From Trichosphaerium sp. ATCC 40318 (Eukaryota; Protista; Tubulinea): DNA of 64,000 nt. Below, piece by piece: positions 4,959 to 44,080 of this stretch. The stretch's first letter is position 1. Every line of letters starts with the position of its first letter. The position numbers and the translations under genes are program-made. The stretch is taken from the NCBI GenBank assembly GCA_038496445.1, contig JALMLS010000363.1, forward strand, positions 1-64,000. The letters are read 5' to 3'. Below the pieces are notes generated by a model. It had not been told where the DNA came from, did no database searches, and worked only from the letters and a program-made list of their open reading frames with translations.

Positions 4959-5241
4959 TTTTTATCTTGGGGTCGTATACGTTGTTAATTCTCACGACCA
5001 CACTCTAGTAATGTATGCGCTTACCACGCGCACATCGGCTGTTGTTTAAACGCCTGCGAAATTGTTTTACAGCAACAATAAGTTTAACTGTTTAAGTCGA
5101 CCCAAAAATTAATACAATACATTTACACAAGTGCCATCCATAAATAATCGTCTTATTTACGGAGGTAATCAACTATCAGCCAAGTAATTTGCGGTGATAC
5201 AAATAATCTTTTAAATTGGATGGTGCACGCTATTGTTGGTT

Positions 5242-7814
5242 ATGAGTGAATCAGATTTACCCGTTGTAACAACACCGCCGATGCGCCCTCGTAGCGACAA
5301 ATGGCAGCGCGGACGAACGCGGGACTTTATTTATAACACCAGCAGACCCACTGAGCCGAATGCAAGGTATTTGCGTATTATTGTTTATTTGTATTTTCCT
5401 AACACGCTGTCAGACCCACTAGAGTGCGTGGTGAGAGTATTGGCATTGCAAGGAGAGACAGCGCGAGCGCCAGACCGCACGTTAGCGAAAGCATACCAAT
5501 CGACTCTAGTAGAACGCGCATTCGTTCCTCTGTTGTGACAGCAACCAGTCCCCCTCAACGAAGAGGTGTTATGTCAATCCCACCACTATCGGTATACATT
5601 TGGCATCTTTGCCAAAACGCAGTTATTTACCTTTTTTAGCATGCCAACTCAGCCGCGTTTTTATTGCGCTCACCGCCGCCTCTCAGATTTGCTAGCCCAA
5701 AACTGGCTAGGTATGTCAAATGACGTGAAAAAAAAAAATTAGTCGGTAGAACATGTCAATAACAGCTTGTATTAGATCCCAAGGAGCAATTCAAATGTCA
5801 CCTCAACGCGCGAAAACCAAATCAGCTCCTATTAGCGTCACTGGTAGTGTAAAAGAAGGCTACACTATTTCATATTTTGGTCAAGAACCGAGAATGGCTG
5901 TCAGTGGCCCAGAAGAGACAATGTCGCCATTGTTGAAGAAGAAGCAAAACAATAAGCTGATGCAACAGGTACTAAAAAAAAAACTGCGGAGGGTTCTAGT
6001 TGTTAGCTGCTGGGTTAATCTTGTTTTTTTTTATTTCCTGTTTTTACATTTGGGCAAATGACACGTCTACACAATTACCATGAGATTGACGTGTAATTGT
6101 ACGCAGGTTGAAAAATATTTGGGTGTGTTGAAGGGTAGACTGTCTATTAAGTTCCAAGACAAGAACGATCTGATTCAAGAGCTGACAACGCTTCGTGAGG
6201 AGAACAAGAATATACTGCTTGAACTCTCGAACCGTGCGAATAGAACTCTTATAATGAGGTGAGTCGTGCATGCATCTGCTACAGAACTCCTCATTGATGA
6301 TTGTGCATTAGATATCGTGATTTGGCAAAAGTAAAACAATTGCGTGCTGAAAGTCGTGTAAGGTCAGTTTCGTCACGTCACAATTTTGTAGCAGTAGGCG
6401 CTTATTAGCTTTCTAGATTAGCAGAAGCATCTATTGAAGCTATTTCATCTAAAGTTGCGAATGTGAATGCAATCATCACTGCTTGGCGTAGCGGCAAACC
6501 AAAACCTAACATTCAAATATATCCGCATTTTTATGTCAGTGTAAAGGGTAACGTGATATACTTGTTATGATAAGCTAATATTTTTATGCATAGATATATG
6601 CAAGAAGCATGATGAGTATAGAAAAGCGCATTACTCTCTGAGGGTACGTGAATAAGGTGATGATTACAAACTTGAATTTCTGACTTTTTGGTTGCTCTGT
6701 TTAGTGCCTGAATATACAAGTCAAATTAGTACACAGACAGTACGTACTTGTTGCCGCTCGCGTAACACCTATGCGATCACAAAGGACGCGAAGCAAAGTG
6801 TTAAAGAGCATACTGGCCGCATCACCACCCATGTCAGAGAGTAGACCTCATTGTCCAGAGGCCTACAATCTACAAATGGACTTTGATCAGTTCATATTTG
6901 ATAGTGCTTATCCTGAAGGCATGTGTTTTATCGTGTAACGTTATTTTTAGTTGCTAAGATTGTTGTAGGAAAGCAACTTAAATTCCTTTTTGGGCAACTT
7001 GAGACGAGTATAGCGTCTGTTCAACCACAAGAGATAATATCATTCCTTGAAGGCATGGTTAACACGATAATTTCAGGTAAAACTACATGAGCTCTCGTTT
7101 GATGTTTTTTAACCTTTGTTAGATCACTCCATCGCTACAGAAGAGTTTGAGCGTGTTTATCTTTATCTCGAACGCTCAGTATTTCCTAAAATTCAGAACC
7201 AACTATTGAAAATAACGTGCATTGATACTGTAGACTTTGATGAGCACAATGAGATGTTTTTGCAAGGTTTGAGATTAATGTCAGTCCATTTCCACTACTT
7301 ACTTTGTACAGGTCAAGCTCACTTACGAGCGCAACCCGTTAGTTCATATGGTATACCTTCTGTACTTGAAAATCCTCCAGAGCTTTTCGCCTCAGCGATT
7401 GATACGTTATCCTATTTATCCTATCAGACAGTGCGTAACAAAACATTATTTATTTCAAAAGGAACTAATTTTATTCATCTCAGTGCCCTTGTGATATTGC
7501 GTACGTAATGGCAGATGCTTTGGATAAGATAGCAACAGTGGCTCAAGACAAAGAAGGACCCCTAGGTACGCCGAATAAAAAAATGAACAATTTGTAGCTA
7601 CAAATGTCTAACTTTGCGATTAGGTGCTGATGTACTATTTCCTATTGTTCTATTTTGTTTGACACAATCAGAGACTTTGTGCCTTCAAGAGACTTTATTT
7701 ATTGTCAAGAATTTTTCGAGCTCAGCTGAATGCCGTGGTCCTCTGGGATACAGTGTAGCGACAGTTGATGCTGCAGCTTCCCATATAAAAGTTGCCCTAG
7801 ACGAGGCTACGTAA
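5242..7814 (+). CDS. VPS9-domain Rab5-family GEF with central coiled coil, multi-exon
   Basis: C-terminal exons 'GADVLFPIVLFCL...GPLGYSVATVDAAASHI' match the VPS9 catalytic D/P/Y/T pattern. Coiled-coil exon 'QDKNDLIQELTTLREENKNILLEL'. The N-terminal exon structure is less certain. Confidence 0.75.
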
Positions 7815-8482
7815 TGGCAGAATTGTAACAGCTAGGGTGGACCTGTTTATTGGGTTTTACTTGGTTTTTAACATCAACCAACGTGGGAGCTGCTTAGCAA
7901 GAAGAGCAACACCCTGTATGATGCGCCTCAAAAGGTGCAGCGTGTCGGAAACTTGTCAAAACGAGTAGCATTGATATCGTTCAACGCGGAGAAGAGAAGT
8001 CAGCACAGTTAAGAGATATTTGTTGATGGAGTGCAGATTATGAGATGAATAAAAATATTATTGGGCACTATCTACGCGTTGTCTTATTTGCTGTGCAGTT
8101 CTTGCTGTATTTATATGTGACTAAAGTGATGTCTCGTATTTAACAATAATTTGTAGAATGACCCAAGATATGTTGCACTTAATAAAAGCTCTGATAGCTT
8201 CAAGCAAGTATTGTACAGGGCAGGTGAGTGATGTAAGCCACCTACTGCTATAACTTCGGAGAATGAAGAAGACTGCAACGGACAACTCCAAAGGTATTGG
8301 AGGTCTACAAAACAACTGTGACACCGATTTTAAGACTGAAAACTTGAATACTACTTTTCCATTGATGGTCTTTACAAAAGTGCTTTGTCTTGGACCAGAA
8401 TCTGTAACGTGTCCGTGCTCTTAAGAAACATATTGACTTTCGGTTATCTCTTGTACCGTTATTTAACCCTGTTCAACTAAAT

Positions 8483-8976
8483 ATGTCGAACGGTTCGAAC
8501 AAGATTGAGCTCCCACTGGTACATGATGAGCTCTTGTCTTCTGACATGGAGGTTCTATCGTTCTCTTCAGAAGATGTTTCAACGCATAGTGGTTTCTCCC
8601 TGTACCTTGATGTGCCCTCTTCCGACGAGGAAGCAGATCCGGTATCTAACGATACATATAGCGCTCTGAAAGCATTACAATGCGAAGGTGTGCTCTACAA
8701 AATATACCCTTGAATTTACCTTTTGGGCGTTACTCATTGCCTAAAGCTCACCTTTACACAGCCGATGTAACTGAAGCTGCCGAGCTACGCAAAACAGTTT
8801 GTGAGCAACTTGAACATGTGTTTGCTCAGCTTCAACAATATAAACTGGACCCCGAAGACCCACAAAATACATTAGCATGGTTTGGCTACGATTTCTACTT
8901 GAGAATTTACTCACTTAATTGTTGTAGGGTGGTGAACCTAAATAAGTTTGCGCAGTCCTTGCATACTACTGATTAG
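8483..8976 (+). CDS. Small hypothetical protein, acidic N-terminus, 3 exons
   Basis: ATG 8483; two GT-AG introns join to '...LQCEAHLYTADVTEAAELRK...TLAWVVNLNKFAQSLHTTD*'. No recognisable domain. Confidence 0.45.
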
Positions 8977-9178
8977 TTGCCCAGCGCATCGGCTGATACT
9001 GCCCAATAAATGTCCTTTGTGTAACCTTTGACACATTCATATTGAGTCCTGATTGTCCGTTGTCGTGCCATTTCTATAATTTTCTTAGGAGTCTTAGGAA
9101 ACCAACTTACGACAACAACTGTTAAGTGAATTTCAGTACAAAAACCAAATAGTATGCTCCCACAAACTGAAAATTGGG

Positions 9179-10834
9179 ATGAAAACCATTTGTAACACAG
9201 TATTGCGTAATACAGGGCATGCTCTGTGGGTATTTGCGCTGCTTCTGCTTATTTATTTTACAATAACAACGAAAAGCTTTGTTTTGGCTCTCATTACGTG
9301 TTTATATGCGATTGCGCTGGTAAAAAACGTATTTAGCCAAAAGGTACACAATCTTATTTACACAACACCAATACGCGTAGAAACGCACTCCCACGTTCAA
9401 AAAACCCCGTGTGATAGTACTTGGAGCCGGTTTTGCCGGTCTCACTGTGGCTAACGCCTTAAACAAGGTAAAATATGTTTAAATACATAATTCATCGTAT
9501 TGTAGAACATTTTTGAGGTCATTGTAATTGACAAACGTCAGCATTTTGAATTTACACCAAGTGTTCTCCGTGTGAGTGTATATCCATCAATGGCATCGAG
9601 ATTGCAGGTACATTCATAGCTTTCTGAGCACGTGACTTACGTTTGTTTTTTTTTTAGGTGCCTTTTTCAAAGTTTCTGCAATGTCAATACATTCAATCTG
9701 GCGTGGCATCAATGGATCAGTCACGAGTTATCTTAGACAATGGAGATACAATTTGTTACGATTATGCCGTGATAGCAACTGGCTCGAGCTACAGTACAGA
9801 AGGTATACAGATACATGTACCACCTCTGGTTTCTGATGGTTTTTCTTCAGGGTGCATGGAACATCTCGTCTCACCACAAACAGGAACGAGTTTGGCGCAA
9901 CAAGCTAATATGCTACGATCAGCTAGATCAGTATTGATAGTAGGAGGTGCGTTAGAAATGAGGTGACATCAAAAAGTGTAACTCATACAAAAGGTGGCAT
10001 TGTTGGCGTAGAACTTGCTGCAGAGATTGTGACTGCGATGCCTGATAAAGACGTCTCCATTGTTCATAGTCACTCAAAATTGATGCCACGCATCCCTGAA
10101 AGAGCCTCAACATACGCAGAATCCTTTCTACGTCGGCACAGTACGCTAAAAAATGATGAAACCAAAAGCTAACTTAAGCCAGATGTTAAGCTCTACTTGG
10201 ACCAAAAAGTCGTCAAAGCAGATAACACTACGTTCCATACCAACACTGGTGCAGTCATTGATTGTGATATCGCCTTTGGTTGCGCTGTAAAAAAGCCATG
10301 TTCAGAATTTATTCATCTTGCAGGCACTATTCCATCTTCTAGTTCCTCTAAATAAACGTTTGACAATGTCTAGGTGCTAAGGACGCGCGAGGGTATGTAT
10401 GTGTGAATTCTTTCCTGCAAGTTGCTGGCACACAAAAAAATGTGTTTGCGTGTGGTGATATTGCGTCCATCGAAGAGGAGAAGCTGGCACAATCCGCTGA
10501 AATTCAAGGGCACGTAGTCGCATCCAATATAACGTACGTGCCCAGAACTTGTAGCGTACCTAATTAGACGGATAGGGCCTTGCAAGAAGAGCTCCCTGAG
10601 TCAATGAAAACTTACAACGCTGTTGATCGGATTGTCGTTATTTCTCTCGGGATGTTTGATGGTACGCTCGTATGGGGCGATTTTATTCTGCAAGGAACTG
10701 TGTTGCGTCTTATCTCAGTAATTTTAAAGCCTTTGATTGAAATCAAAACACTCATGCCGCTGTGGGGGCGCTGTGCCGTACGTTGGGCATTTTGTTGTAA
10801 TGGCACACGCGTAGAAAAGGAAGTTGAAGTGTGA
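9179..10834 (+). CDS. AIFM2/FSP1(AMID)-like FAD/NAD(P)H oxidoreductase with N-terminal hydrophobic segments
   Basis: Rossmann motifs 'RVIVLGAGFAG', 'YDYAVIATGSSY', 'VLIVGGGIVGVELAAEI', 'NVFACGDI'. Start codon uncertain. Confidence 0.8.
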
Positions 10835-11204
10835 ACTTGATCCGGGAAAACAAATTGTACAAAATAAAAGTGTAGTGTAACAATAGAAAGTTGTCTATTT
10901 CCATGTGAGTTTCACGTGTAAAAACGGGTCGATTTATTTACTGTTTCTCGCGCTAGCAGTAACAAAAGTTTTTTTTACCGCAATTGATTAGGAACGCCTA
11001 CCAATCTACCACAAACGCATATAAAGTACCACACAACCACAATGGGTATTTTTAACTAAATCTCCGTGGGGTCACTTCCTTTTGCGAAAGACGCATTGTA
11101 AAACTAAACAACACGCGTAGAAGAGAACGCTAAGAAGGCTAAAACAGTATTAAGTTTTTTCTGTTCTCACAATCGCTTAAATCTACCATTCTTCTACACT
11201 CACT

Positions 11205-12363
11205 ATGACTGACGTAGCAGCATACAAAAAAGCATACACTGCCCTTCGCGCTTTGGTAAAGGGTTCGTAGTAAAAAGGAGAAAATTGAGTTCAAGTATTA
11301 ATTTTCTTTTAGCCAAAGGATGTGGTCCAATCCTCGTACGTTTGGCTTGGCATGACGCCGGCACTTTCTGTAAGAATTCTGGAACAGGTGGTGCTAATGC
11401 TACTATGCGCCATGCTCCTGAAGCTGGCCACGGTTGTAACAATGGGTACGCGAAGCAACAACTTTATCCTAGTGACTGCTAACGCGCCACAGTCTTAACA
11501 TTGCTCGTGATCTACTAGCTGAGCTTAAGAAAGAATACCCAACCATCACATGTACGCTCCCTATCCATTTGAAAGCAACTAAAACCTACTAGTGGCTGAC
11601 TTCTGGCAACTCGCTGCTGTCGCCGCTGTTGCTGAGATGGGCGGCCCTAACGTCGTTTTCAGACCTGGTAGAAGTGATCAACCAGTACGTATTTTAAATT
11701 CCAAAAAGAAAAAATAAATTACGAACTCGGCTTGTTACGCCGTAATACGATCGTAAATACCTCGTACAGTACCATACTAATGCGTTCTTGCAGGAAGACA
11801 AGTGCACACCTGACGGTCGCTTGCCTGACGGCGATAAGGGTGCTGACCACATTCGCTGCATCTTCGGTAGAATGGGATTTGACGACAAAGATATGGTAGC
11901 CCTCTCTGGCGCCCACACTTTGGGGTACGATTTTTTTTTTTTTTTTGTTTTTTTTCATCACTTTTTGGTAAATTTGCTCATCTTTTACTTAGTCGTTGTA
12001 ACGCCGACCGTTCCGGTTTCGTTGGACCATGGACCGCTGAACCACTCAAGTTCGACAACAGCTACTTCACCTCTCTATTTGATGAGACATGGGTAAAAAA
12101 TGAGTCAGCAAAACAATTGCAATACAAAGATTCTACTGGAAAGTTGATGATGCTCGAGACCGATTTGGCACTCACCAAGGACCCTAAATTCAAGGTCTTT
12201 GCTGAGAAATACGCCAAGAGCCAAGCTGATTTCTTCGCTGACTTTGCTGTTGCTTTCCAAAAATTGCAAGAGCTCGGTAACGCTAAGGTACACAACAACA
12301 TTTTTTTTTATACGTGAACTAACTGTTTGTGCTTTTTAGCTCGGAGAACCTATTGCTTTTTAA
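11205..12363 (+). CDS. APX: Class I heme peroxidase, ascorbate peroxidase-like
   Basis: '[16 protein letters not shown]' (distal R/W/H), '[25 protein letters not shown]' (proximal H, APX-type R, W), '[10 protein letters not shown]'. Stop TAA 12361-12363. A possible upstream start exists at 11042. Confidence 0.9.
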
Positions 12364-12661
12364 AAAAGTATCCAGATCTTTTGCATTGAGACAATAAAGC
12401 CCTTTATTATTTTTGCCCAAACCCTGTCGTTTATTCTTTCGTACTCACGTGATCGCGCGGTAAATAGCCTTTTTTCAACACCAACTTTTTGAGGAACAAT
12501 ATTAATTAATTCTCTAAGTACCCCTTATTAACCACCTGAGTCCAAATGTCGCTTTTTTGAACTATGTATCTTCATTCTAGATTTTTATCGGGTTTGTAAA
12601 TCCGCAATAACCGGACTTAACCCCACGTGGCTTGCCGGTTTGTGCACAATTACCTAACACA

Positions 12662-15082
12662 ATGGAGGAGTGCAACAGACCTAAACTAGGTCCGTACATA
12701 TTGTATGCAGAGCATACGCTAGGCAAAGGTATGTTGCGGTATATACTGCCCCGTTGTAACCAATTTAAACTTTTTTTTTTTATGCCTAAAAAAAACCCCA
12801 TCACGTTTTGTGCGTATGGCCCGCATCTCTCATCTATGATGGTAGGGATGGTTGGAACAGTCAAACTAGGTGTACATGCTAAGAGCAGGACCAAAGTAGC
12901 TATAAAGATAATAGCAAAGGACAGCGTGGCAGACGCAAAGCTCCTTCAAAAGTTAGAGAGAGAAATAGCTGTTATGAAACTACTTCGCCATGGCAATGTT
13001 TTACGACTTTACGACGTATACGAGAGTTCAGCATTCTTGTACGTTTATGCAGTCCTGCATCTTACTTTTGTTTTCGGTAAAAACTGCAACTTCTGCAGGT
13101 CTTTTTTTTTTTGAAAGCTACAAAAACCTTTCCACTTCGCTTTTTAGCGCACGTGATTTTTTTTTTATGAGTTTTTGGCTACCTTTGGCACTTTCACTAT
13201 TTTATTCATGTATTGAAGAGTGTATTGAGAGGCAGTGTATTTGTGAATACGGGCTTTTTTAGTTGATTAAAATTTGCTACTTAGGTTTTTGATTATGGAG
13301 TTTATGGAAGGTGGCGAGTTGTTTAATCACCTCGTTGATACAGGCGTACTGGAAATGGCTCAAGCGCGTAAATACATGCAAGATATACTACAAGGTCTAG
13401 AGTACTGCCATCGGTACCGTATATGTCACAGGTACAACATCGCACTGTAGTGATTTAAAACAACGCACTTTTTTAATTTTTTTAATGACCCCAACTAATG
13501 TCTTTGTTTTAAAAAGAGATCTAAAGCCCGAAAATGTAAGTGTTATTTGGAAGTAGTTACTTTTTTGCCTTTTTATAAAGTGACTCTGTTATTCAGATAT
13601 TGCTTTCTAAGGATAAAAGAACACTAAAACTCGCTGATTTTGGTATGGCTAACCTCATGGGTGACAGCAATCTTTTAAAATCTTCTTGTGGTACTGTTGT
13701 TTGAAACAATCAATAAATTGTGCGCCCTTATAATTTTTTTATAGGCTCACCTCATTATGTCGCGCCTGAGGTATTATTGGGTAAAGGATATAATGGATAT
13801 GCCTCTGATGTATGGTCTTGTGGCGTTATTCTGTTCGCTTTAGTTACGGTACACATTTTAGGCGCCTGCTAAGAAAGTTAATTAAACACAAAACAGACTC
13901 CTGTCTTTTCTTTTTTTGTTTGCTGAACACGTGGTGGAAACGTGAATGAATATCTATGTATACAGTTGTTTGTATCTGTGGTTAAATGTGCTTATAGGGT
14001 AGACTACCTTTTGACGATCCAAACATTCGCGTACTGCTAAACAAGGTGATGGAAGGTTAGTTCCAGAAGCAAGTCGCTCTGTTTTCTAACACAACTGCCC
14101 TTTAGCTCATTTTACGATACCGTCGTTCGTGCCTAATGACTGCAGGGATCTCATAAAACGTATGCTTACTGTAGATCCGGAAAAACGTATCACAATTGCA
14201 GAGATTAAAGTAAGCAAAAAACTAGCGTACCGTTTTTCCCGTATTAATATTTTAAAGGAGCACCCTTGGTTTGCCTCGCATGGCACTAAGTGGGTATCTT
14301 CAGACGATGCAGTACCCCTATCATCTTTACAAGAGCCAATAGATTTATCAGAGTGTAATGAACTTGTACTACAACAGATGGCTACGTTGGGATACCCACG
14401 AGACAAGTACTTATTTACAACGCTTACAGAATCGAAAGAGAATTTTCAAAAAATGTTGTATCACTTGATAGAAAACTGGCAACGGGAATCTTCCGAACAC
14501 GTGCCCAAGATGCCTACTAGATCGCAATCTCCTTTTTCAATAAGTGCTCCATCTATTCCTCTTGGTAGACTAGAGAGACGACGACGTTCTTCCTATGCAC
14601 GTCGTCGCACACGTGATAAAGTATGTAAAACGCTATTTTTGGATCCTTTTTTGTCAATTGTATTCTAACTCTTTTTTTAGACGCCACCTACTAGTCCTTC
14701 GCGGAGCCCTCGAAGTAAGAGGAGGCATAAATCTAGTTCTAGAAATAGAGGGAGAGCAGGATCACTTCCAGAACTATTTGAAGAAACTGAACCAGTGTTG
14801 GTTACAGCACAATTGAAGAAGTACTTACATTTGGGAACACCGATTGGTGATCTTGAACCGCTAAATCAGCAACTATATTTGAACCCAAAACGGTCTTGGT
14901 TCTCTTCTCATATGCGATCTCAGAGCCCAGCAAGATCTAGAGCCTCACCAACAAAGGTTAGAACACGGAGTCCAACCAGACGGTCAAGCGCGGGCACAAG
15001 TCCCAAGCGAACTGATAGCCCAAAACGTAAACGAAAAGGCAAGAGTCTTAGTCGGTTATTCGATAAGTTCAAAGGACGTTGA
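12662..15082 (+). CDS. AMPK-related Ser/Thr kinase, BRSK/SAD-like, with UBA-like segment and RS/SP-rich tail
   Basis: Spliced: '[12 protein letters not shown]', 'VAIKII', '[14 protein letters not shown]', 'HRDLKPEN', 'DFG', '[11 protein letters not shown]', '[17 protein letters not shown]'. Confidence 0.9.
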
Positions 15083-33841: not shown

Positions 33842-34340
33842 TTTAGCCGCGTTAAATTGTATTTCATCTCGTTTGAACACTACAACGCGTGTAGATAGAT
33901 AACGTTCTGTTTACGCGCGTTAATGGTATTTGTACTGTTAAAAAGGCAAAATGGCGTTTTACGTACTGACATTATTGATTACTGCACGCCTATGTACTGG
34001 TCGGGTGTGTTTCGAGCTATTTAGTTTAGTTTTGACCAAAAAATATTCGTTGTACCTACAGTAGAGTTGCGGTACGCGACTTATTCTAGCAGTAAAACGC
34101 AACGCCATCACATAAACGATCTGAATGTTAATTGTCCGAAAAACCGGCCGAGCTAACTTAATTACACCCGGTTAAGGCATAGGTCGAGTGCTGGTAACAT
34201 AATAGCTTGAGTATTCAGTATGTTGTCACAGGCAAGGAAAGAGAATGTGGCGTTATCACAATTGCAAATAATTTATTTTACTTTTTTATGTTTGCTAGTT
34301 ATTATTATGTCTATCACGTGTTTTTTGTTTATTTTTTTTG

Positions 34341-36108
34341 CTACACGGCGTTATCAACGCTAATGACAACAGTCTCAGCATTAGTTCCAATATTTCCTCT
34401 ATTGTGTTGTGCTCTATATCTACTGCTGCGTCTTCTCTTAAGTCTAGAAAGTGGTCAAAAACAGTACCAATAAATCAAATTGATCAACAATGATTGGTGT
34501 TTTGGAATTATCGAATATTTTTAGACTTACGATTGCGGTAGTAGTTTGTCAAACATTACAGTTCGTTTGTGAAGCATGAACACAAATCCTGTTAATATAG
34601 TTGAAACACCTGTTATGATGACTAGATAGTAGGTCCATCTACAGAATGAGTAGTTAGTATTGCTTTTTTATTTTTTTATAGTACCCATATCGTGGTTTCA
34701 AGAATACTGTCACACCGTCTCTACCTGGGAATGGAATCTACATATTATTACTCATAATTTTAACTCTAATTTTATGTACTTGTAGCTTAGTAGACATGTC
34801 AGATAACGAAGACCAGAGAATACAAGACAACACTAACAATGAACCTAGGATTATTTTGTTAGTAGAAAATATCTTATTTTTAAAGGTGTTAAGAACACCA
34901 CCATGTGCGATATGTAGTGCGTACCAAATACAACTGAGAATATAGAAAAAGCTATGAGTTTCCTTAGATACATCATAACATTCGCTACGATCCACAACGG
35001 AAACGTTATCCTAAAGGGTTCAAAAATTAAAAAACGGAAGAAAAAAAAGTTGTCTTCAAGCTTACCATAGGAGGAAAAACACATAATTGCTAGCTTCACG
35101 ATAACAACGCCTTACTCTTAAGCGTCCACCGTCAAATGTAAAGTATTCCAATACATGAAGAATGGGCAGTGGTATACCCGTCTCTCTTTGGTAGTATAAG
35201 TAGTAACCCGATAATATCACGTGATATGCACGTGAAAACTCGAACTATTTTCAGGAAATGGCGAACTTCTTTTTGCTTAAAACGCACCTTGCTTTAACGT
35301 ATTCTTTAATCGTCTTAGACGCTATCAAGCGTGAGGGATTGCAATATTAGTTATGAAGTTACCTAGTGCTGTGCTTGCTGAATAGTCCATTCGTCCTTGT
35401 ACAGAGCCTAATTGAAATCTTTCATTGTAATAAACTGATCCATTTAGTCTTCCACTTGGACCCGATACTGTTCTGTATATGCGTTATATATCGCAATCAT
35501 ACTAAAAGAACACAACTTACCCATCTAGAGTTACATTGAAGCGACCAATACCAATGTGAAGGCCTTAGTGAGCCATCGTAAGAATTAAATTACAAAATTA
35601 CATTTCTGTACCAATCTTTCCTGTGAACGTTGTTGCTTCTATTTAAATCGGTCAATTCCGTAAGATACGGACTCTCGCATAGTAGTGAAACGTACCAGCA
35701 GAGCTAAACTGAGTCATAATGTCAACACGGTCACTTTCCCACTCAACGCCGAAAACACCAACTAATAGGCTATATGAGCTGTTTTGAGAGCCATCGGTAT
35801 AAATAACGTACGAACAATAGCGCAGCCAATGCCCAAACTCAAGAATGACCCCAAAGCTATCCAATGAGGCCTCTAAAACAAAAAATACTGTAAATCACGT
35901 TTTTTTACTTTTGTTCAGTCCAGAATAACCGAACAAAGTTGCTCTTGGCATTCAGTACCTTAAAACTTGGTAATACAAGCAATATTGCAACATATACTGT
36001 AACAAACCAAACAAGAACTGCTGCTACGTCCCTGTCATTGTGTGCTCCAGCGAATAGAGATCCATACAATGTAGGGAGACCACCACGATTAGTTAAATCG
36101 CGATCCAT
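34341..36108 (-). CDS. DUOXA: Dual oxidase maturation factor (DUOXA/NIP family)
   Basis: Spliced: TM helices plus DUOXA-like motifs 'FGVEWE', 'GKIGLHIGIGRFNVTLDG', 'LNGSVYYNERF', 'YVKARETGIPLPILHVLEYFTFD', 'YREASNYVFFLLW...LWIVANVM', 'LKPRYGWTYYL'. Confidence 0.88.
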
Positions 36109-36236
36109 TCAAGATTAGCTCCACTACCTCCTAGTAGTTCTTAATTCTTGCACAAAAGTTTCCCACGCAAAATCACGCTTTTCAGATCACGGGCCGACAC
36201 TTGAAGTGAAAATGAATCATATGACGTTTTAAAATA
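36109..36236. promoter_or_regulatory. Putative bidirectional promoter shared by DUOXA and DUOX
   Basis: Only 128 bp between the divergent start codons; contains three spaced CACG half-sites. Function inferred from position only. Confidence 0.55.
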
Positions 36237-39200
36237 ATGAACATGATACAACATAGGAAGGTTATCCTTATAATCGGAGTATTATGCTCGATAATTGGTG
36301 AGTCTGTTGTATATTCTTGAATAATCTTTCCATCTGTATCTCTATTTGCTTGTTTAAAGCCTTAAACTAACTAAAACCGAAGCGGGTGATCTTCTAGGCG
36401 AAGAAAGACGATCTTTTAATGGATGGTATAATAACTTGGAGCGTTTATCATGGGGAGGCACTTGTACGACACGTTTATCGGTGGAAATAAGCGATGTGTG
36501 TCTAACTTTATATTTCTTTGTTGTAGTTACGCCTCTATCTCGAAGAGTTAAATCTGCATACCAAGACGGCGTTTCTAAGCCTCAACAAGGGCTACCGAAC
36601 TCAAGGTATAAAAAAGCCTAACAAATAACAAAACACGTGATATTTCACGTGCCAATTGAGTTACCCTTTTTTGTGATTTACGTAACAACTTACAACGCGA
36701 TAAGGTTTCTTAGCGAAACACTGTTTTCGACTACAGAGCCAAGACAGGATCAAACTGGACTTAATGTACTCGCCGTGTTCCATGGTGCGTTTTTGTTCTA
36801 CCCGACAATCACAAATTAATGGGCAATGTTTAGGGCAACATGTGGTTGATGAAATTGTAGATACACGGTATGTGACGTCACAGAAACAAGAATTTTCTTT
36901 TCTGTACTGATATTTGCATAAGAGTAGCATCATGTCCTCTTGGATACACACATATCGCGTTAAATGGGTCAGATCCCATCTATGGATCAGCAGAGTATAT
37001 TCCAATGAGAAGGTAAGGAATTTTTGTATTTGGCCAAACGTTGTGTTAACTGAATTAAACATCAGATCTGCTTATGATCTATCAACTGGTAAAGGACCGA
37101 ATAGACCAAGACAGCAGGTAAGCAATATTTAAAAATCCGATTACCATGTTACATTAGAGTCTAAACAATGTTTGTTTTATGTAAATCTTTTCACGTGTAA
37201 CTTGTCATTTAGATAAATCATGTATCAGCTTGGCTTGATGGTAGCAGTATATACGGTTCGGAAAAGACTCTATCAGACTATATAAGAAGTAAGATATTCC
37301 TACACAAGTTGTAATATGGCTAATTTCTTCCGTCAGATTTCGATAAAGGAAGAATGACAACAGCAAATGCTGAAGTATGTTTAAACAATTAATCGCCAAC
37401 ATTTTTCTCTAACTTTTTTTTAAAGTACGTTCTCACACGGTCATACCCTCAAAAGAATACGAAAGGACTACCACTTCATGACTTTCCAGCACCAGCATAC
37501 GATAATGGAATGCCTGACGAGTCTACATTATTCTGTAAGTGACAAGCTCTCCGTTTCTTCACATTAATCGTTTTCTAGTGATGGGTTCAAAGCGAGCAAA
37601 TGAAAACCCTCTTAGCATTGCTCTTGGCATGGTGTGGTTAAGAAGACATAATTACCATGCAGACGAGTTTAGGATGGGTAACGATGGATTCTCTGACGAA
37701 CTTGTATTCCAACAAGCGCGTCAATGGACAGTGGCAGAATACCAAGTAATCCATCCATTCGAAATCTTGCTTAACCTTAACTTGTTTTATAGCACATTAC
37801 TTTGTATGAATGGCTTCCTGCCTTTTTGGGTATATCAGCAAGTGATATACCAGCTTATACAGGGTATAAACCAGACATCAATCCTGCAATATCTCATGTG
37901 TTCACTATGGCAATGAGGTTTGGCCACACGGTACAACTTCTTCAAAAACCAAATGCTTTGTGTTTCCACAATTTTATCGTTCTTGTACTCACGTTTCTTT
38001 AGCTTGTGCCTTCTGAGTTTTACACTGTTGACGCTGTTTGTGAGTCTAAAAGCCCGTTCAGAATGTGTAACTGGTTTTGGCGCTCAGAAGAGTTTTTTGA
38101 AGGAGGTGAAGCTCCTCTTGAAGATATTCTTCGAGGCATGGTATTCCAACCAGCATCAAGAGGAGATGTTCAAATAGTAGAAGATCTAAGAGGATATCTA
38201 TACGGACACTTGGACTTCACAAGAAGGTACTAGCAATACTTCACGTTAACCAGAAAACTGGTTCTTGTTCCCTTACTATAAAGTTTTACTTTGTTAACTT
38301 TTGTTGATTGTAGCGATTTAACGGCCAAAGATATCGAAAGAGGTCGTGATCATGGTATCCCTACATACGGCGAAGCAAGGGAAATACTTGGTTTGAGTAA
38401 TACAGGAAATTGGACTGACGTTATTGGTCCACATGCTGTAAGCTTCAAGTTGTTCTTTTCCCTCATTCCTACCTTTTCGTTGCTGACGAGTTTTCGACAA
38501 AATTAGGACCTTGATGCTTTGCAAAGTATTTACGGAAACAGTTTTGACGATGTAGACTTTTTCGTCGGCGGTACGACTGTCAAGTGTTACTAGTTTTGTA
38601 ATTGACTTATTTTTAGGCATGATGGAAACTACTGCTGATGGTAAACCTGGACCTACTTTCAGACGTGTCATACTTGACCAATTTGTCGCATTACGTGTAT
38701 GAATGGTACCCTTTGTTAAATTGTTTTTGACTTTGTTTTTTTAGGATGCTGACAGGTTTTGGTATGAGAACACTGCTGAGCTTCATGGGTATGTAGATTT
38801 GTATGATGTGTGAGTTAAATCTAATTGTATTAGACACTTGACAGAAGCGGAGATAGAGCTTGTTCAGAACACAAGTTTGATGGATGTTTTAGAACAAGTC
38901 TCTGTATTGAAACTGCCTATCGATAAGGTAAACACTTCGGTTTTGATTAAATGACAAATGTTTATCGAATTTCGTTTTTTAGTGGGCTGCTTTTACTTCT
39001 GGAGGCACTTGGCAGGAGTGTCCACTATTGGCTAACGGCACTATGGAACCTTGTGTACCACCAAGATTAATGGACTGGTACAATAAGAGGTACTATATAT
39101 TCTTTTCAAATGACGACAACAGAAGAACTTCTGACACGTGATTTTCATTTAGTGAATATCACATATGGATTATTATATGTGTTATTGGTGCTTTTGGTTT

Positions 39201-42200
39201 ATTCTGTTTCTTGGCACTTAGATACCTCGTTGCACAACGCCGTATACGTAAGGACATGCCAAAAAAGCATAAGCCACTTTAACTTAAAAACATAGGTCAC
39301 AAAGGAGGGCATAAGCACAGTGACATACTAGTGTCTTTCCCAAAGAGTACAAAAGTAGGAAAACTAACAATGTTCGGTGTATTGAATGTTGTATCAGCTG
39401 ATAAGCGTACGTTCGCGAGAACCAATGAAGCTTCTAACTTTTTTGACAATTGCAGAACGCCCAGCGTTTATTTCTGTCGATAAGGAAAAGCTAACACTCT
39501 ATGATGCATCCAAAAAGCGACTACGGTACGCATCAAAAACATTGTACGAATGAACCCTGATGCTTTGTTCAGTACAGTTTATATTGGGCTTGTACACTCC
39601 TTGGGAAAATCAGACGATGATGGATTCAGACACTTGTTGATTAGCATACCAAGGGAGTATGATATTCTACTCAGGTTCCCTACTGCAGGAAAAAGAGACG
39701 AAGTAGTTGATAAATTGTGTGACGCCAAAGGAGGACGAGGATATAATGTACTACCTTACTAGAGTTTAATCTTTTCTCATCCTTTTTTGATAAAGGTGAA
39801 CAAGAAGCAATACAAGAGATTGTTGCTTGATATGAAGACTAAAAAAGTCCGTAAAGAGCAACTCAAGAAATACTTTGGTATGGTGCTTGAAGGACTCAAA
39901 GAAGGTTGGACTGTTCATGATGCATCTGAGTGTACAAGATCAGCTTCTGGTATCCTTAACACAGAGTTATCAAAAGGTACAATAAACTATTCGCTTGTTT
40001 TTTGTTGACACGTGTATAGACGAGTTTGCTGAGGCTTTTGGACTTGATATCGAATCTGATTTTGTGAACAGATTATTCAGGGTTGCTACTGCGCAACGAC
40101 CAACAGGACATATTACCTTTAAGGAGTTTTTTGATTTTGTGTTCCTGTTCTCAAAGGTAAAATGAGAAAAAAGCATGAAAATAACCCACTAAGCGCTTAC
40201 TTGTTCTAGGGATCTCCTAAAGATAAGATTAAAGCAATATTTCAACTGTAAGTTATTATGAATCTAATAAGACTAGTAGTACTAATGACAATAAAGGTAT
40301 GATCAAGGTAAAACTGGATACTTGTCCAGAGGAGAGATTAAAGAAATGTTCACATCAACAGTAAGTTTTTTTTTTTCCTGTTTCAAAAAGGGTGAGTAAT
40401 TAACATGGTTATTAAGATTGAAGTTGGGCGATCAAGACAAAAAATGAGTCAAGGAGACTTAGATAAGTTTGTAACAGCGTTTATCAAGAGTGCAGGTACC
40501 TCTCATAAGTCACATGTAGCCCAGTTTAATTTTCTAAATTTTTTCTCAGGTGCTAAGAATCCGAAGCGTCTGCAGCTCGAAGAGTTTACGAGAGTTATGT
40601 GTAAGCATGAAGAGATATTAAATGAAGGAAAATTAAACCTTAGAGCAACATGGAGAAAAACAAACTTGAAAAAACAAGTAAGTTAGGTTCCATCCATAAA
40701 CTACTTAGGATTCTTACTTTATTCTCAACTAGAAAAAAAAGGCAAACACCAAAACAGGTGGCAAACAAGTACGTCATATTCGGTTTACTACATTATCTGT
40801 ACCTTATTTTAACCGATATTATCGAATTAGACTACAAGAGAGACGAACGATCTAGTTGAGATCTCCGAAAATCCAAGAGCTGACAAAAATGAAGATGAAA
40901 CAGATTCTGACATTGATGACTTATCTGGGGATGAAGAAATTAAATCTCCTATGCCTAAAGCTAAGATCCCTCTTGAAAAGCTTCAAGAATATATGATACA
41001 GCGTACTCTTGTGGACTCACAGAAATCAGAAGCTGCAGAAGCTGCAAAAGAGTTTTATTCAAAGAAGTCTTCATTGAATCCAAAAGACATCAGCTTTGAG
41101 TTATCTGATACAGAAGATATAAGTGATATTGACGAAGAAGATTACAGTGACGATGACTCTGTTGAGATTGACGATTCGTCAGATGAGTCAGAATCGGAAG
41201 AATCCGCTTCGACTTCTGATTCTGATTTTGATGTTAAAAAGAAAACAAACACGGCGCCTATGAGCATACTCAAGAAGACTAGGAGAGGTGGTAGACCAAA
41301 GCAAGTCAAGAAAAAGTCTGGGGAGATAGATTCAGATGAATCTATTGAGTCTATGACAGATGACGAGGAAGATTCTAATAAGAGAGCTTTAACTTTTAAC
41401 AACGTAGATTTCAGAGAGTCTATCGTTCCTCCAAGGATCAGAGCTAGTAATAAAAGTAGACTACGTGTATCACCCAAAGCTGTCAGACGTATTGGAATGA
41501 GTTCTCTCACAAGAAGCGGAGGGAAAAAGCATAGCGCAGGATTGAACAAAAGTGGTACTTTAAACAGATTTTAGCTGTTTTGTTTTAATACTTGCCTAGT
41601 GAGGATCAAAGAGCCTTCAGAAAGCGACTCTTCGGAGTCATCAGAAAAAGCACAAGAAGTAGTAGCTAAACAACCAGAACCTGTATCATCAGGACCGGGT
41701 ATAACAGAGCCAAGTAAACCACAAGGAAGATTTGTTGCGTTCATATCAAATCATCGAACTGAAATTATTATTGTTGCTTTATTCTTCCTTATCACTGCCT
41801 GGCTCTTCGTAGAGCGTGCATACTGTACGACATGTTTCATTTTGCTCAAAATCCTCACGTGCATGATAGTGTATTCTGTCGAAAAAGAGCACATTGGACT
41901 CCGCGCAATGGCCGGATTTGGCGTAACTGTCAGTCGTGGCGCTGCAGCTGCGATGAGTTTTTGTTTTGCTTTAATTCTGTTGACTATGGTACCCTTCTTT
42001 TTGTTGTTTATGTCTTTCTTTGTTAATTCATTTAATAGTGTCGTAATACGATCACTTTGCTCCGCACAACTCCATTGAATCGTCTCATACCTTTTGATCA
42101 CGTGTATGATTTTCACAAATTGGTTGCTGCGACTGTGTTTGTTTTCACATGGATTCATATTCTTGGTCATTTTCTAAACTTTTTCCATTTGTCGACGCAA

Positions 42201-44080
42201 TTCCCGGCTGATGTTGAATGTACACTACCTGCTGTATACTTTGGTAGTACTTTCAGACCTTCTTTTGGCGGATACTACCTTTTTGGAACTCTCACTGGAT
42301 TTACAGGATTATTAATGACACGTGCGTTTTTCAGAAAATTTTACTAAATAAATTGCTTTCCTTGGAAGGCTTGAACGTTTCTCTTTTCAAAAAAAGGCGT
42401 TTTGTCGAAATTCAACAACTGCGCTTTATTCTTTGTTTGTCAAAGCTTCTGGAGGTTGGTAGAAGCGTGATTCAGCGTTGATTATTTTTTTCTTATTTTT
42501 TCTAGTGATTATGATTGTGATGTACATGTATGCGATAGAATGGGTCCGACAGCATTTCCATCTGGTTTTCTGGACATCTCATCATCTTTATATTGTATTA
42601 TACATTCTTATGTTCCTTCATGGATCCGCTTCATTGCTCCAGAAGGCCGACTTATGGTTGTACTTGACAGGACCATTGGTTCTATTCTTCATAGACAAAG
42701 TCGTCGGTAGCACTCGAACCTACGCAAAATCTAAGGTTGTAGCTGCTGAGCACTTGCCTTCAGGTGTAACGAAACTAGTATTCAGGAGAGACAAGGGATT
42801 CAAATACCAATCAGGACAAGTACGTTCAAAAAAAGTCGAAAAAAAAAAACTTTCAACTTTGTTCTTCGTTTTGCTGACTTTCTACCAAGTGGGTCAGATT
42901 ATCGTGTCCTAGTATTGCTGGTATGAATAAACGCGTTTTTATGAACAGTATTCGTTGTTAATATCTTTAATAGCAAAGCATGTGTTCCATCCATTCACTT
43001 TGACATCGGCACCACATGAACCACACTTATCATGTCATATCCGCGCTGTTGGACCATGGACAAAAGCCTTACGGTAATTGATGAACACACCATTCGTTTT
43101 ATTAGTTTCTTATAAATGACATAGACGTGTAATGAACCCACAACTGTACACTGATATCTCTAAATACCCTCAAGTACGTTTTTTTTTTCTTGTTTTTTTC
43201 CTTCGCAGGATTCGTTTTTTGATGGTCTTTTCTTCTAGCTCATAGTAGATGGTCCTTATGGTGAAGGTCTTCAAGATTGGTATAAATTTAAAACTGTTGT
43301 ACTTGTTGGTGCTGGTATAGGTATCACGCCTTTTGCTTCTATTCTAAAAGATTTGATTCATCAAGTTAAAGCAGTACGTTTTGCTCTTTGCTGCAAACCT
43401 CATCGCGCAGTGAATTCACCTCATCTTGATTCAATCAACTAATAAATATCGTTTAGAACGCAGTTCGTGTTGAGAAGGTATATTTCTTTTGGATTATGCG
43501 GTCACAAGGTACTATCAAAGACTTACTTTTTTTGAAAAAAAATCCAAGGAATCCCCTTCTTTTTTTTTGTTAGTCTCTCATTTTCTGTAGCGTCTTTTGA
43601 GTGGATGTTCGATATTTTGAAGGATGTCGAAGCTGTAGATACTATGAACATTCTAGAGACTCATATATTCATAACACAGTACAAGAAAAAGTTTGACTTG
43701 AGAACAATGCTGTTTTATGTTGCAGAAAAGAACTTTCATCGTACACTTGGCATATCCTTCCTTACTGGCTTGCGTGCTACCACTCATTTTGGTCGTCCAA
43801 ACTTACAGTATGGGATCATAGTATTTAGAAGCTTTTTACTAACTTTACACTTAAGATACGTCCTGCAGAAGATCCAAAACGAACACAGACTCGAAGTCAA
43901 AAAAATAGGTTTGTTGAGCTTTTTTGAAAAAAACGTTTTGTCGTGTTCATTCCTTCTCTTATAGGCGTGTGTTCTTGCGGACCACACTTTCTAAGTGAAG
44001 CACTTACAGATGCATGTAAAACGCTATCACAAAGAGATCCAACGTGTCGTATGAAGCACATTACTTCAAACTTTGGATAA
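36237..44080 (+). CDS. DUOX: Dual oxidase: signal peptide, peroxidase-homology domain, TM, PH-like domain, EF-hands, NOX ferric-reductase TM domain, FAD/NADPH-binding domains
   Basis: '[14 protein letters not shown]', 'SAYQDGV', '[11 protein letters not shown]', 'RANENP', 'MRFGHT', '[13 protein letters not shown]', 'DADRFWYEN', '[15 protein letters not shown]', '[11 protein letters not shown]', 'IPFD..YDFHK', 'IHILGH', 'FWTSHHLY', 'LHGS', '[11 protein letters not shown]', 'DGPYGEG', '[13 protein letters not shown]', 'THFGRP', 'SCGP'. Confidence 0.96.

What the first reader, a model, noticed from the sequence alone, without database searches (positions are those of the whole stretch)
34341..44080. 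Animal-type DUOX and DUOXA head-to-head, 128 bp apart, in an apparently non-animal (amoebozoan-like) genome
Seen: a full-architecture dual oxidase (peroxidase-homology domain, TM, PH-like, EF-hands, NOX core with all four heme His, FAD/NADPH motifs) is divergently paired with a recognisable DUOXA. Both genes carry many introns of the local style, so they look native rather than contaminant. Known: DUOX with DUOXA is the H2O2-generating system of animal epithelia, and vertebrate DUOX/DUOXA genes share bidirectional promoters. Inference: the Dictyostelium-type STAT and the APX point to a protist host. If so, the enzyme-chaperone pair and its head-to-head layout may predate animals or have arisen convergently, implying an extracellular H2O2 system in an amoeba (prey killing, or cross-linking of coat or cyst wall).
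Basis: partly seen in the sequence, partly recalled or inferred. Interest (0 to 1): 0.9.

Follow-up and report, generated by a model that had tools for sequence, protein, structure and literature searches.

The report
Dual oxidase gene pair in amoeba
A marine amoeba carries and transcribes, back to back, the two genes that animals use to release hydrogen peroxide outside the cell; this pushes a gene pair already known from animals and some fungi one step deeper into eukaryote history, or else it was transferred long ago.

Summary

**The two genes**
- On the + strand, 36237-44080, lies a 43-exon gene for a ~1754-aa dual oxidase (DUOX). Its order is signal peptide, peroxidase-homology domain, membrane helix, PH-like region, EF-hand region and NOX core.
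- On the - strand, 36108-34341, lies a 13-exon gene for a 341-aa DuoxA protein.
- The two start codons are 128 bp apart.
- Both genes are spliced and transcribed in RNA contigs from several studies. Their transcript ends lie about 20 bp apart.

**Host**
- The host is not an animal. The contig also carries a Dictyostelium-type STAT and a class I peroxidase.
- G+C content and intron size fit the published Trichosphaerium genome.
- A marine-protist (MMETSP) transcript matches the exons exactly.

**Origin**
- The pair is not animal-only. Two chytrid fungi have the same head-to-head pair (checked here).
- A 2024 paper already reports this layout in sponges and non-animal opisthokonts.
- In trees the amoeba DUOX falls outside a 100%-supported animal clade.
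- It shares 8-9 exact intron positions with sponge and amphioxus DUOX, which rules out convergence.
- Likelihood tests cannot exclude an ancient transfer from near the base of animals.

**Verdict**
This is a new member of a known system, apparently the first in Amoebozoa. The scan noted this same stretch once before, in an overlapping window.

The parts
34341..36108 (-). DuoxA (dual oxidase maturation factor) coding region: 13 exons, 341 aa, five membrane helices, and a long outer loop with two N-glycosylation sequons
   Evidence: Joints in spliced contigs of runs X1, X2 and X5. ORF assembled. Pfam DuoxA on exon 35065-35220. A profile that includes this exon hits only DUOXA1 among solved structures. 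Colinear tblastn matches to DuoxA genes of an animal-like contig and two chytrids. Helices and sequons.
36109..36236 (.). 128-bp spacer between the two start codons; a likely shared bidirectional promoter. The DuoxA RNA contig reaches 36134 and the DUOX RNA contig starts at 36155.
   Evidence: Sequence; contig ends, table 8. In run X2 the DuoxA contig ends at 36126 against sequencing-adapter letters.
36213..36233 (+). Short upstream ORF (six codons plus stop) in the DUOX leader
   Evidence: Read directly from the sequence. It lies inside the RNA contig that starts at 36155.
36237..44080 (+). DUOX coding region: 43 exons, about 1754 aa
   Evidence: Gene model. Colinear with animal DUOX from the signal peptide to the C-terminus.
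36383..39089 (+). Peroxidase-homology domain. It keeps the proximal His (RFGH) and the Arg/Glu of the R-x-x-E-x-P motif, and lacks the distal His and Asp.
   Evidence: Pfam An_peroxidase. Exon 37793-37930 aligns to lactoperoxidase 307-351, ending at its RFGH. Motifs read in the alignment. 36-38% identity to sponge, amphioxus and chytrid domains.
39153..39247 (+). Exon for the extra membrane helix (TM0) between the outer peroxidase domain and the cytosolic part
   Evidence: The only in-frame GT..AG solution that keeps a helix. Hydropathy peak at residues 582-600. The exon length fits the 790-nt spacing in RNA contig X1 record 2.
39296..40677 (+). Cytosolic PH-like region and EF-hand region. EF-hand 1 is degenerate; EF-hand 2 is near-canonical and split by an intron.
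   Evidence: blastp of residues 576-935 against Branchiostoma DUOX, E 3.7e-30. Alignment. Pfam EF-hand_6 E 0.0019 on 40298-40360; no Pfam hit for EF-hand 1 or PH_DUOX on single exons.
40733..41724 (+). Lineage-specific insert of about 290 aa, rich in Ser, Lys, Glu and Asp, between the EF-hands and the NOX core
   Evidence: No counterpart in animal, fungal or algal DUOX. It is transcribed, since it is part of P0001.
41725..44080 (+). NOX core: six membrane helices with four heme-binding His, then the FAD and NADPH domains
   Evidence: Pfam Ferric_reduct, FAD_binding_8 and NAD_binding_6. Exact match to MMETSP protein P0001 with 12 GT..AG introns. 46-50% identity to sponge and amphioxus.

Best explanation
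This is a native, transcribed DUOX/DuoxA gene pair of a marine amoebozoan, most likely Trichosphaerium sp. It is homologous, down to exon-intron structure, to the pair known in animals and chytrid fungi.

Inferred mechanism:
- DuoxA, a five-helix membrane protein, binds the newly made DUOX in the ER and escorts it to the cell surface as a stable complex.
- There the NOX core passes electrons from cytosolic NADPH through FAD and two hemes to outside oxygen.
- The complex, with its outer peroxidase-like domain held by DuoxA, releases H2O2.
- The two genes are read in opposite directions from one very short shared promoter, which would keep enzyme and partner in step.

The pair and its head-to-head layout predate animals. 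For the amoeba, descent from the common ancestor of Amoebozoa and opisthokonts is somewhat more likely than an ancient transfer of the two-gene cassette.

Shown here: gene structures, transcription, domain content, family membership, layout and tree position. Inferred: complex formation, H2O2 output, co-regulation and the biological role (coat cross-linking, defence or prey killing).
For: - Domains and motifs.
- Splicing and transcription of both genes in runs of several studies, with transcript ends at 36134 and 36155.
- Exact MMETSP transcript.
- Host markers on the same contig. Fit to the published genome statistics.
- Same head-to-head pair in Gonapodya prolifera (L002; DuoxA 5163-7406 minus, DUOX 8001-14664 plus), in Chytridiales sp. 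JEL0842 (L008) and in an animal-like contig (L001).
- Published head-to-head layout in sponges and non-metazoan opisthokonts: PMC11721785.
- Full-length tree (1514 columns): animals are 100/100 without the amoeba, and the amoeba is separated from animals plus fungi by branches at 97/89 and 97/96.
- Shared intron positions with the same phase: 9 with amphioxus and 8 with a sponge, against 0.1-0.3 expected and 0 of 3000 shuffles reaching that number. Three of them are also shared with a chytrid.
Against: - No second amoebozoan DUOX or DuoxA turned up among the labelled hits, so the distribution is patchy.
- The NOX core is closer to sponge (49.5%) than to fungal DUOX (36-41%).
- AU tests do not reject the amoeba grouping with animals (p 0.12 with the mixture model; p 0.48 with LG+F+G4), nor with non-sponge animals (p 0.30).
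- EF-hand 1 is degenerate, so calcium control as in animals is doubtful.
- No biochemical data exist.
- The organism's name rests on earlier scan notes plus indirect fits, not on a marker-gene tree made here.
Confidence: 0.8

Rival explanations
1. The amoeba lineage acquired the two-gene cassette as genomic DNA from an early animal or another opisthokont (or from a third eukaryote) long ago. The genes then gained many local introns.
For: - Patchy distribution: no other labelled amoebozoan hit.
- DUOX-like proteins also occur in the alga Spirogloea and in a Gloeochaete transcriptome, which hints at transfers or contaminants.
- The NOX core is most similar to sponge DUOX.
- 8 of the 11 introns shared by sponge and amphioxus are also in the amoeba gene.
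- AU tests do not reject a position beside or just inside animals.
- A head-to-head pair of under 10 kb could move as one piece.
Against: - The best trees put the amoeba outside animals plus fungi.
- Grouping with sponges is rejected (p-AU 0.007).
- 33 of its 42 introns are not shared with any compared gene, and its donors follow the local GTAC/GTAA style.
- Three shared introns are also in chytrids, so they are older than animals.
Confidence: 0.3
2. The stretch is foreign (animal or other eukaryote) DNA, or a chimeric join, in the assembly, not part of the amoeba genome.
For: The nearest named relatives of the NOX core are all animal DUOX.
Against: - The same contig carries a Dictyostelium-type STAT about 3 kb from DuoxA, and a class I peroxidase.
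- G+C is even across the window.
- Spliced transcripts occur in runs from different studies and years and in MMETSP.
- The protein lies outside the 100/100 animal clade.
Confidence: 0.03
3. A peroxidase domain and a calcium-type NOX were fused independently in the amoeba, and the neighbouring DuoxA-like gene is a coincidence.
For: Peroxidase-NOX fusions without EF-hands or DuoxA exist on compact intron-less contigs at the base of the clade, so such fusions can stand alone.
Against: - The protein is colinear along its whole length, TM0, the PH-like region and the EF region included.
- It shares the same derived loss of the distal His and Asp as animal DUOX.
- Exact intron positions are shared in both the peroxidase and the NOX parts.
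- The same partner gene sits in the same orientation in fungi and animals.
Confidence: 0.02

Closest known systems
Animal DUOX1/2 with DUOXA1/2 (solved complexes 7D3E and 6WXR)
   Same: Same domain order, the same four heme His and FAD/NADPH motifs, a five-helix partner with a glycosylated outer loop, and a head-to-head gene layout. The NOX core is 45-50% identical.
   Different: A ~290-aa acidic/serine-rich insert sits before the NOX core. EF-hand 1 lacks the calcium-binding acids. The peroxidase domain keeps the proximal His, Arg and Glu. The spacer is only 128 bp. There are 42 very short introns.
Chytrid fungal 'Dual oxidase 1' with neighbouring DuoxA (Gonapodya prolifera KXS19340.1; Chytridiales sp. 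JEL0842)
   Same: Non-animal DUOX of 1750-1890 aa, divergently paired with a DuoxA gene. Two or three intron positions are shared.
   Different: The fungal spacers are longer (about 0.6 and 2.4 kb), and the fungal DuoxA proteins are about 470 aa with long tails. The NOX core is only 36-41% identical. Neither pair was found discussed in the papers searched.
Duox/DuoxMF co-evolution and microsynteny reported in PMC11721785 (Mol Biol Evol 2024)
   Same: It reports the head-to-head pair in sponges and in non-metazoan opisthokonts, and proposes shared transcriptional regulation.
   Different: Its sampling stops at opisthokonts; the word Amoebozoa does not occur in its text. It does not use intron positions.
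NOX5 / NoxC-type EF-hand NADPH oxidases of protists
   Same: A calcium-type NOX core.
   Different: They have no peroxidase domain, no TM0 and no DuoxA partner. In the tree, the proteins without a peroxidase domain form the outgroup.

Membership tests
DUOX (dual oxidase branch of the NOX family) | N-terminal extracellular peroxidase-homology domain (Pfam An_peroxidase) | tested here: met
   Three exons hit PF03098 above its cut-off. One exon aligns to lactoperoxidase 307-351.
DUOX (dual oxidase branch of the NOX family) | Extra membrane helix (TM0) after the peroxidase domain, plus an N-terminal signal peptide | tested here: met
   Hydropathy peaks at residues 3-21 and 582-600; exon placed.
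DUOX (dual oxidase branch of the NOX family) | Cytosolic PH-like domain (Pfam PH_DUOX) | tested here: inconclusive
   No Pfam hit on single exons. However, the region aligns colinearly with animal DUOX, including the IPREYD motif, and residues 576-935 match Branchiostoma DUOX at E 3.7e-30. The spliced protein could not be given to the Pfam tool.
DUOX (dual oxidase branch of the NOX family) | Pair of calcium-binding EF-hands | tested here: inconclusive
   EF-hand 2 scores E 0.0019, below the Pfam cut-off, because the loop is split by an intron. EF-hand 1 has no hit and lacks the acidic ligands at loop positions 1 and 3.
DUOX (dual oxidase branch of the NOX family) | NOX core with four heme His and the FAD and NADPH motifs | tested here: met
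   Pfam Ferric_reduct, FAD_binding_8 and NAD_binding_6; motifs read.
DUOX (dual oxidase branch of the NOX family) | Falls inside the DUOX clade in a tree of NOX cores | tested here: met
   The clade of peroxidase-bearing proteins has 99-100% support and includes the amoeba protein.
DUOX (dual oxidase branch of the NOX family) | Produces H2O2 at the cell surface | not testable with these tools
   Needs expression and an H2O2 assay.
DuoxA (Pfam PF10204) | Match to the family profile above its curated cut-off | tested here: met
   Exon 35065-35220 alone scores 34 bits against a cut-off of 23.3.
DuoxA (Pfam PF10204) | Five membrane helices with a long glycosylated loop between helices 2 and 3 | tested here: met
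   Helices at 28-46, 55-73, 195-213, 225-243 and 276-294; sequons at N111 and N126.
DuoxA (Pfam PF10204) | Similarity to solved DUOXA1 | tested here: met
   A three-sequence profile that includes the window exon hits only human and mouse DUOXA1, residues 122-185 (E 3.5e-4 and 6.5e-4). The single exon alone found nothing.
DuoxA (Pfam PF10204) | Needed for DUOX to leave the ER and become active | not testable with these tools
   Needs co-expression.
Head-to-head DUOX/DuoxA locus with a shared promoter | Divergent orientation with a short spacer, both genes transcribed | tested here: met
   128 bp between the ATGs. RNA contigs end at 36134 and start at 36155.
Head-to-head DUOX/DuoxA locus with a shared promoter | Co-regulation of the two genes | not tested
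   Only contigs were available, and they cannot give expression levels.

The most novel reading that the evidence does not exclude
The DUOX/DuoxA pair, already joined head to head on one bidirectional promoter and already carrying at least three of today's introns, was present in the common ancestor of Amoebozoa, fungi and animals. It has stayed linked for over a billion years. That would make it one of the oldest conserved two-gene arrangements in eukaryotes, and would imply that regulated extracellular H2O2 release predates multicellularity.
Probability: 0.5. Interest if true: 0.6.

Novelty: new member of a known kind. Interest (0 to 1): 0.45.

Why it matters
Textbooks treat DUOX and its maturation factor as an animal epithelial system. 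Recent work moved the pair back to the opisthokont ancestor.

An expressed pair in an amoebozoan, with conserved intron positions and the same divergent layout, has two consequences:
- It would move the origin to the ancestor of Amoebozoa plus opisthokonts, or else document the transfer of an enzyme-chaperone cassette as one unit.
- It offers a single-celled organism in which to ask what the complex did before there were epithelia.

The protein is also a natural variant worth testing for how DUOX is switched on. It has one degenerate EF-hand, a long acidic insert and a partly intact heme pocket.

Tried and rejected
**Searches limited by exon length**
- Single-exon searches for DuoxA failed or were blocked by the tools' length rules. 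A PDB search with the exon alone found nothing, and the ESM Atlas gave no usable hit.
- An alignment of DuoxA exon pieces was too badly aligned to use as a profile.
- As a result, no database-wide DuoxA search and no DuoxA tree could be made. The spliced proteins have no reference, and I did not type them in.

**Look-ups that gave nothing useful**
- An exact look-up of P0001 found no contig.
- Placing the host with the single-exon Nei glycosylase gene failed, because its relatives are prokaryotic.

**Gene model corrections**
- My first automatic gene model skipped the TM0 helix and made two micro-exons. I corrected these by homology, RNA evidence and contig length.
- One length check, at 39974-40157 against RNA contig X1 record 2, is off by 32 nt and remains unexplained.

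**Tests and literature**
- The mixture-model AU test for 'amoeba inside non-sponge animals' did not finish. I replaced it with a simpler LG+F+G4 test.
- Literature searches for DUOX in amoebae or in Gonapodya found nothing relevant.
Full report
**1. What is there**

The window has an even G+C of 35-43% and is full of short exons.

Pfam scans of single open stretches place the DUOX domains on the + strand between 37.5 and 44 kb: An_peroxidase, Ferric_reduct, FAD_binding_8 and NAD_binding_6. DuoxA lies on the - strand at 35065-35220, at 34 bits against a curated cut-off of 23.3.

Laying the contigs of four public runs on 34300-40200 gave twelve CT..AC joints (GT..AG on the - strand). All twelve occur in three runs from different studies.

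For DUOX:
- A 765-aa protein from the MMETSP transcriptome collection (P0001) maps on 40951-44077 without a mismatch, through 12 GT..AG introns.
- I modelled the 5' half with a small exon-chaining program trained on these introns. It recovered all seven displayed RNA joints.
- I then corrected the model with homology and RNA clues.
- The final model has 43 exons and about 1754 aa, running 36237-44080.
- Between two anchors of one RNA contig the model predicts 790 nt, which is exactly what the contig has. This supports the hand-placed TM0 exon at 39153-39247.
- A second such check, at 39974-40157, is off by 32 nt and I cannot explain it.

The two start codons are 128 bp apart. The DuoxA contig reaches 36134 and a DUOX contig starts at 36155, so the two transcripts begin about 20 bp from each other.

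**2. The proteins**

The DUOX model is colinear with mollusc, amphioxus and other animal DUOX from the signal peptide to the last residues. Its parts, in order:
- Signal peptide.
- Peroxidase-homology domain, 36-38% identical to sponge, amphioxus and chytrid domains.
- TM0.
- PH-like and EF region (E 3.7e-30 to amphioxus).
- NOX core, 46-50% identical to sponge and amphioxus.

The NOX core has the four heme histidines, HPFT, GxGIGITPF and CGP.

In the peroxidase domain:
- The exon ending in RFGH aligns to lactoperoxidase 307-351, which ends in the same motif. From my knowledge of that enzyme, this motif holds the proximal heme histidine.
- The R-x-x-E-x-P motif is kept.
- The distal Asp-His is replaced, as in animal DUOX.

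So the heme pocket is half intact. Heme binding is possible; classical peroxidase chemistry is doubtful.

EF-hand 1 lacks its acidic ligands and is not seen by Pfam. EF-hand 2 is near-canonical but weak. A ~290-aa Ser/Lys/Glu/Asp-rich insert, transcribed as part of one 724-nt exon, separates the EF region from the NOX core. It has no counterpart elsewhere.

DuoxA has five hydrophobic helices and two sequons in a 120-aa loop. It aligns colinearly with the DuoxA genes of an animal-like contig and two chytrids. In a three-sequence profile it hits only DUOXA1 among all solved structures.

**3. The host**
- On the same contig, about 3 kb beyond the 3' end of DuoxA, exons hit STATa_Ig, EF-hand_12 and SH2. 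That is the domain set of Dictyostelium STATa, not of animal STATs.
- A class I (ascorbate-type) peroxidase, CNOT1 and Nrap/NOL6 are also present.
- P0001 comes from a marine microbial eukaryote transcriptome.
- Earlier scan notes name the genome Trichosphaerium sp.. I did not verify the name with marker genes.
- The published draft genome of that amoeba has 37.69% G+C, 75-bp mean introns and 154-bp mean exons (PMC10521059). Here the DUOX introns average 61 bp and the exons 122 bp.
- That paper never mentions an oxidase.
- An attempt to place the host with the Nei glycosylase gene gave only prokaryotic relatives.

**4. Relatives and layout elsewhere**

The nearest named relatives of the NOX core are animal DUOX at 42-50% identity. 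An unfiltered search and cluster look-ups show that proteins with a peroxidase domain fused to a NOX core are not confined to animals. They occur in:
- Gonapodya prolifera.
- Gonapodya sp. JEL0774 and Chytridiales sp. JEL0842, which NCBI already labels 'Dual oxidase 1'.
- The alga Spirogloea.
- A Gloeochaete transcriptome.
- Several environmental contigs.

Layout at the loci I fetched:
- In Gonapodya prolifera the DUOX gene is head to head with a DuoxA gene about 0.6 kb away.
- In the Chytridiales genome it is the same, at 2.4 kb.
- An animal-like metagenome contig shows it too.
- A sponge locus (Corticium) and an amphioxus Duox locus showed no DuoxA within the flanks fetched.

[quoted passage not shown] So 'older than animals' is already in print. 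What I did not find is any report for Amoebozoa.

**5. Vertical or transferred?**

Trees:
- A careful tree of the NOX core leaves the amoeba in a basal polytomy of the DUOX clade, outside a weakly supported animal group.
- The full-length tree (40 rows, 1514 columns) gives animals 100/100 without the amoeba. It puts the amoeba outside animals plus fungi plus environmental sequences, behind two branches at 97/89 and 97/96.

AU tests are less decisive:

| Grouping held together | Model | p-AU |
|---|---|---|
| amoeba + animals | mixture | 0.12 |
| amoeba + animals | LG+F+G4 | 0.48 |
| amoeba + non-sponge animals | LG+F+G4 | 0.30 |
| amoeba + sponges | LG+F+G4 | 0.007 |

Only the grouping with sponges is rejected.

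Intron positions add an independent line. I mapped four annotated DUOX proteins exactly on their loci and compared positions and phases in one alignment:
- The amoeba gene shares 9 of its 42 introns with amphioxus (35 introns) and 8 with the sponge Corticium (15 introns). Chance would give 0.1-0.3, and none of 3000 shuffles reached the observed number.
- It shares 2 with Chytridiales and 1 with Gonapodya.
- For scale, amphioxus and sponge share 11.

This rules out an independent fusion, and also a transfer by cDNA or virus followed by fresh intron gain. Three shared positions are older than animals. It does not separate vertical descent from an old transfer of genomic DNA. The amoeba holds 8 of the 11 sponge-amphioxus introns, yet 33 of its own introns are shared with none of the compared genes. 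I put vertical descent at about one half, old transfer at about one third, and the rest undecided.

**6. How it most likely works**

By analogy with the solved animal complexes, which is inference:
- DuoxA pairs with DUOX in the ER and travels with it to the plasma membrane.
- NADPH electrons cross the membrane through FAD and two hemes, and H2O2 leaves on the outside.
- DuoxA is kept next to DUOX in animals, fungi and this amoeba, which argues that the enzyme has needed its partner from the start.
- Calcium control may be weakened here, since one EF-hand is dead. The long acidic, serine-rich insert is a candidate phosphorylation-dependent switch. This is speculation.
- A six-codon upstream ORF sits in the DUOX leader.
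- The biological role is open: cross-linking of the fibrous cell coat, defence or prey killing.

**7. Verdict**

This is a new member of a known system in a new supergroup, with some variant features. The same stretch was noted once more by this scan in an overlapping window. I found no note of it on other DNA.

Noticed in passing
L003:6137-11702; L004:8001-11768; L005:1426-5193: Compact, intron-less environmental contigs with tiny spacers and helicase, SNF2 and dCMP-deaminase genes (giant-virus-like; not verified) encode peroxidase-NOX fusions of about 1250 aa. These lack EF-hands and have no DuoxA neighbour, and they branch at the base of the DUOX clade. In L003 a plain 581-aa NOX gene sits head to head with the fusion gene.
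   Followed up: partly
P0087, P0279 (Spirogloea muscicola); P0278 (Gloeochaete wittrockiana, MMETSP1089): Full-length DUOX-like proteins are filed under a streptophyte alga and a glaucophyte transcriptome. The Spirogloea pair sits on a very long branch near the fungi. These could be transfers or contaminants.
   Followed up: no
P0319 (Xenia sp.), P0184 (Paramuricea clavata): Octocoral records carry DUOX that falls among bilaterian sequences, although PMC11721785 states that all cnidarians lack Duox.
   Followed up: partly
window:55653-56600 (+): A single-exon 316-aa Fpg/Nei-type DNA glycosylase whose best relatives (35-40% identity) are archaeal and bacterial endonuclease VIII proteins. It may be a laterally acquired gene.
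   Followed up: partly
window:29989-31344 (+) and window:11213-12314 (+): A Dictyostelium-type STAT (STATa_Ig, EF-hand_12, SH2) and a class I (ascorbate-type) peroxidase. I used them here only as host markers.
   Followed up: partly
window:44891-46162 (-): A 423-aa open frame packed with LRR_6 (ribonuclease-inhibitor-type) repeats lies directly downstream of DUOX on the other strand.
   Followed up: no
window:42322-42505: This is the one long intron of the DUOX gene (184 nt against a median of 53). It is spliced out in the MMETSP transcript. I did not check whether it holds an alternative exon.
   Followed up: no
window:33951-34256: Another first-stage note calls this stretch, just past the DuoxA 3' end, a rod-shaped RNA. 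The DuoxA RNA contig of run X2 runs at least to 34300, so part of it may be DuoxA 3' UTR or its neighbourhood.
   Followed up: no
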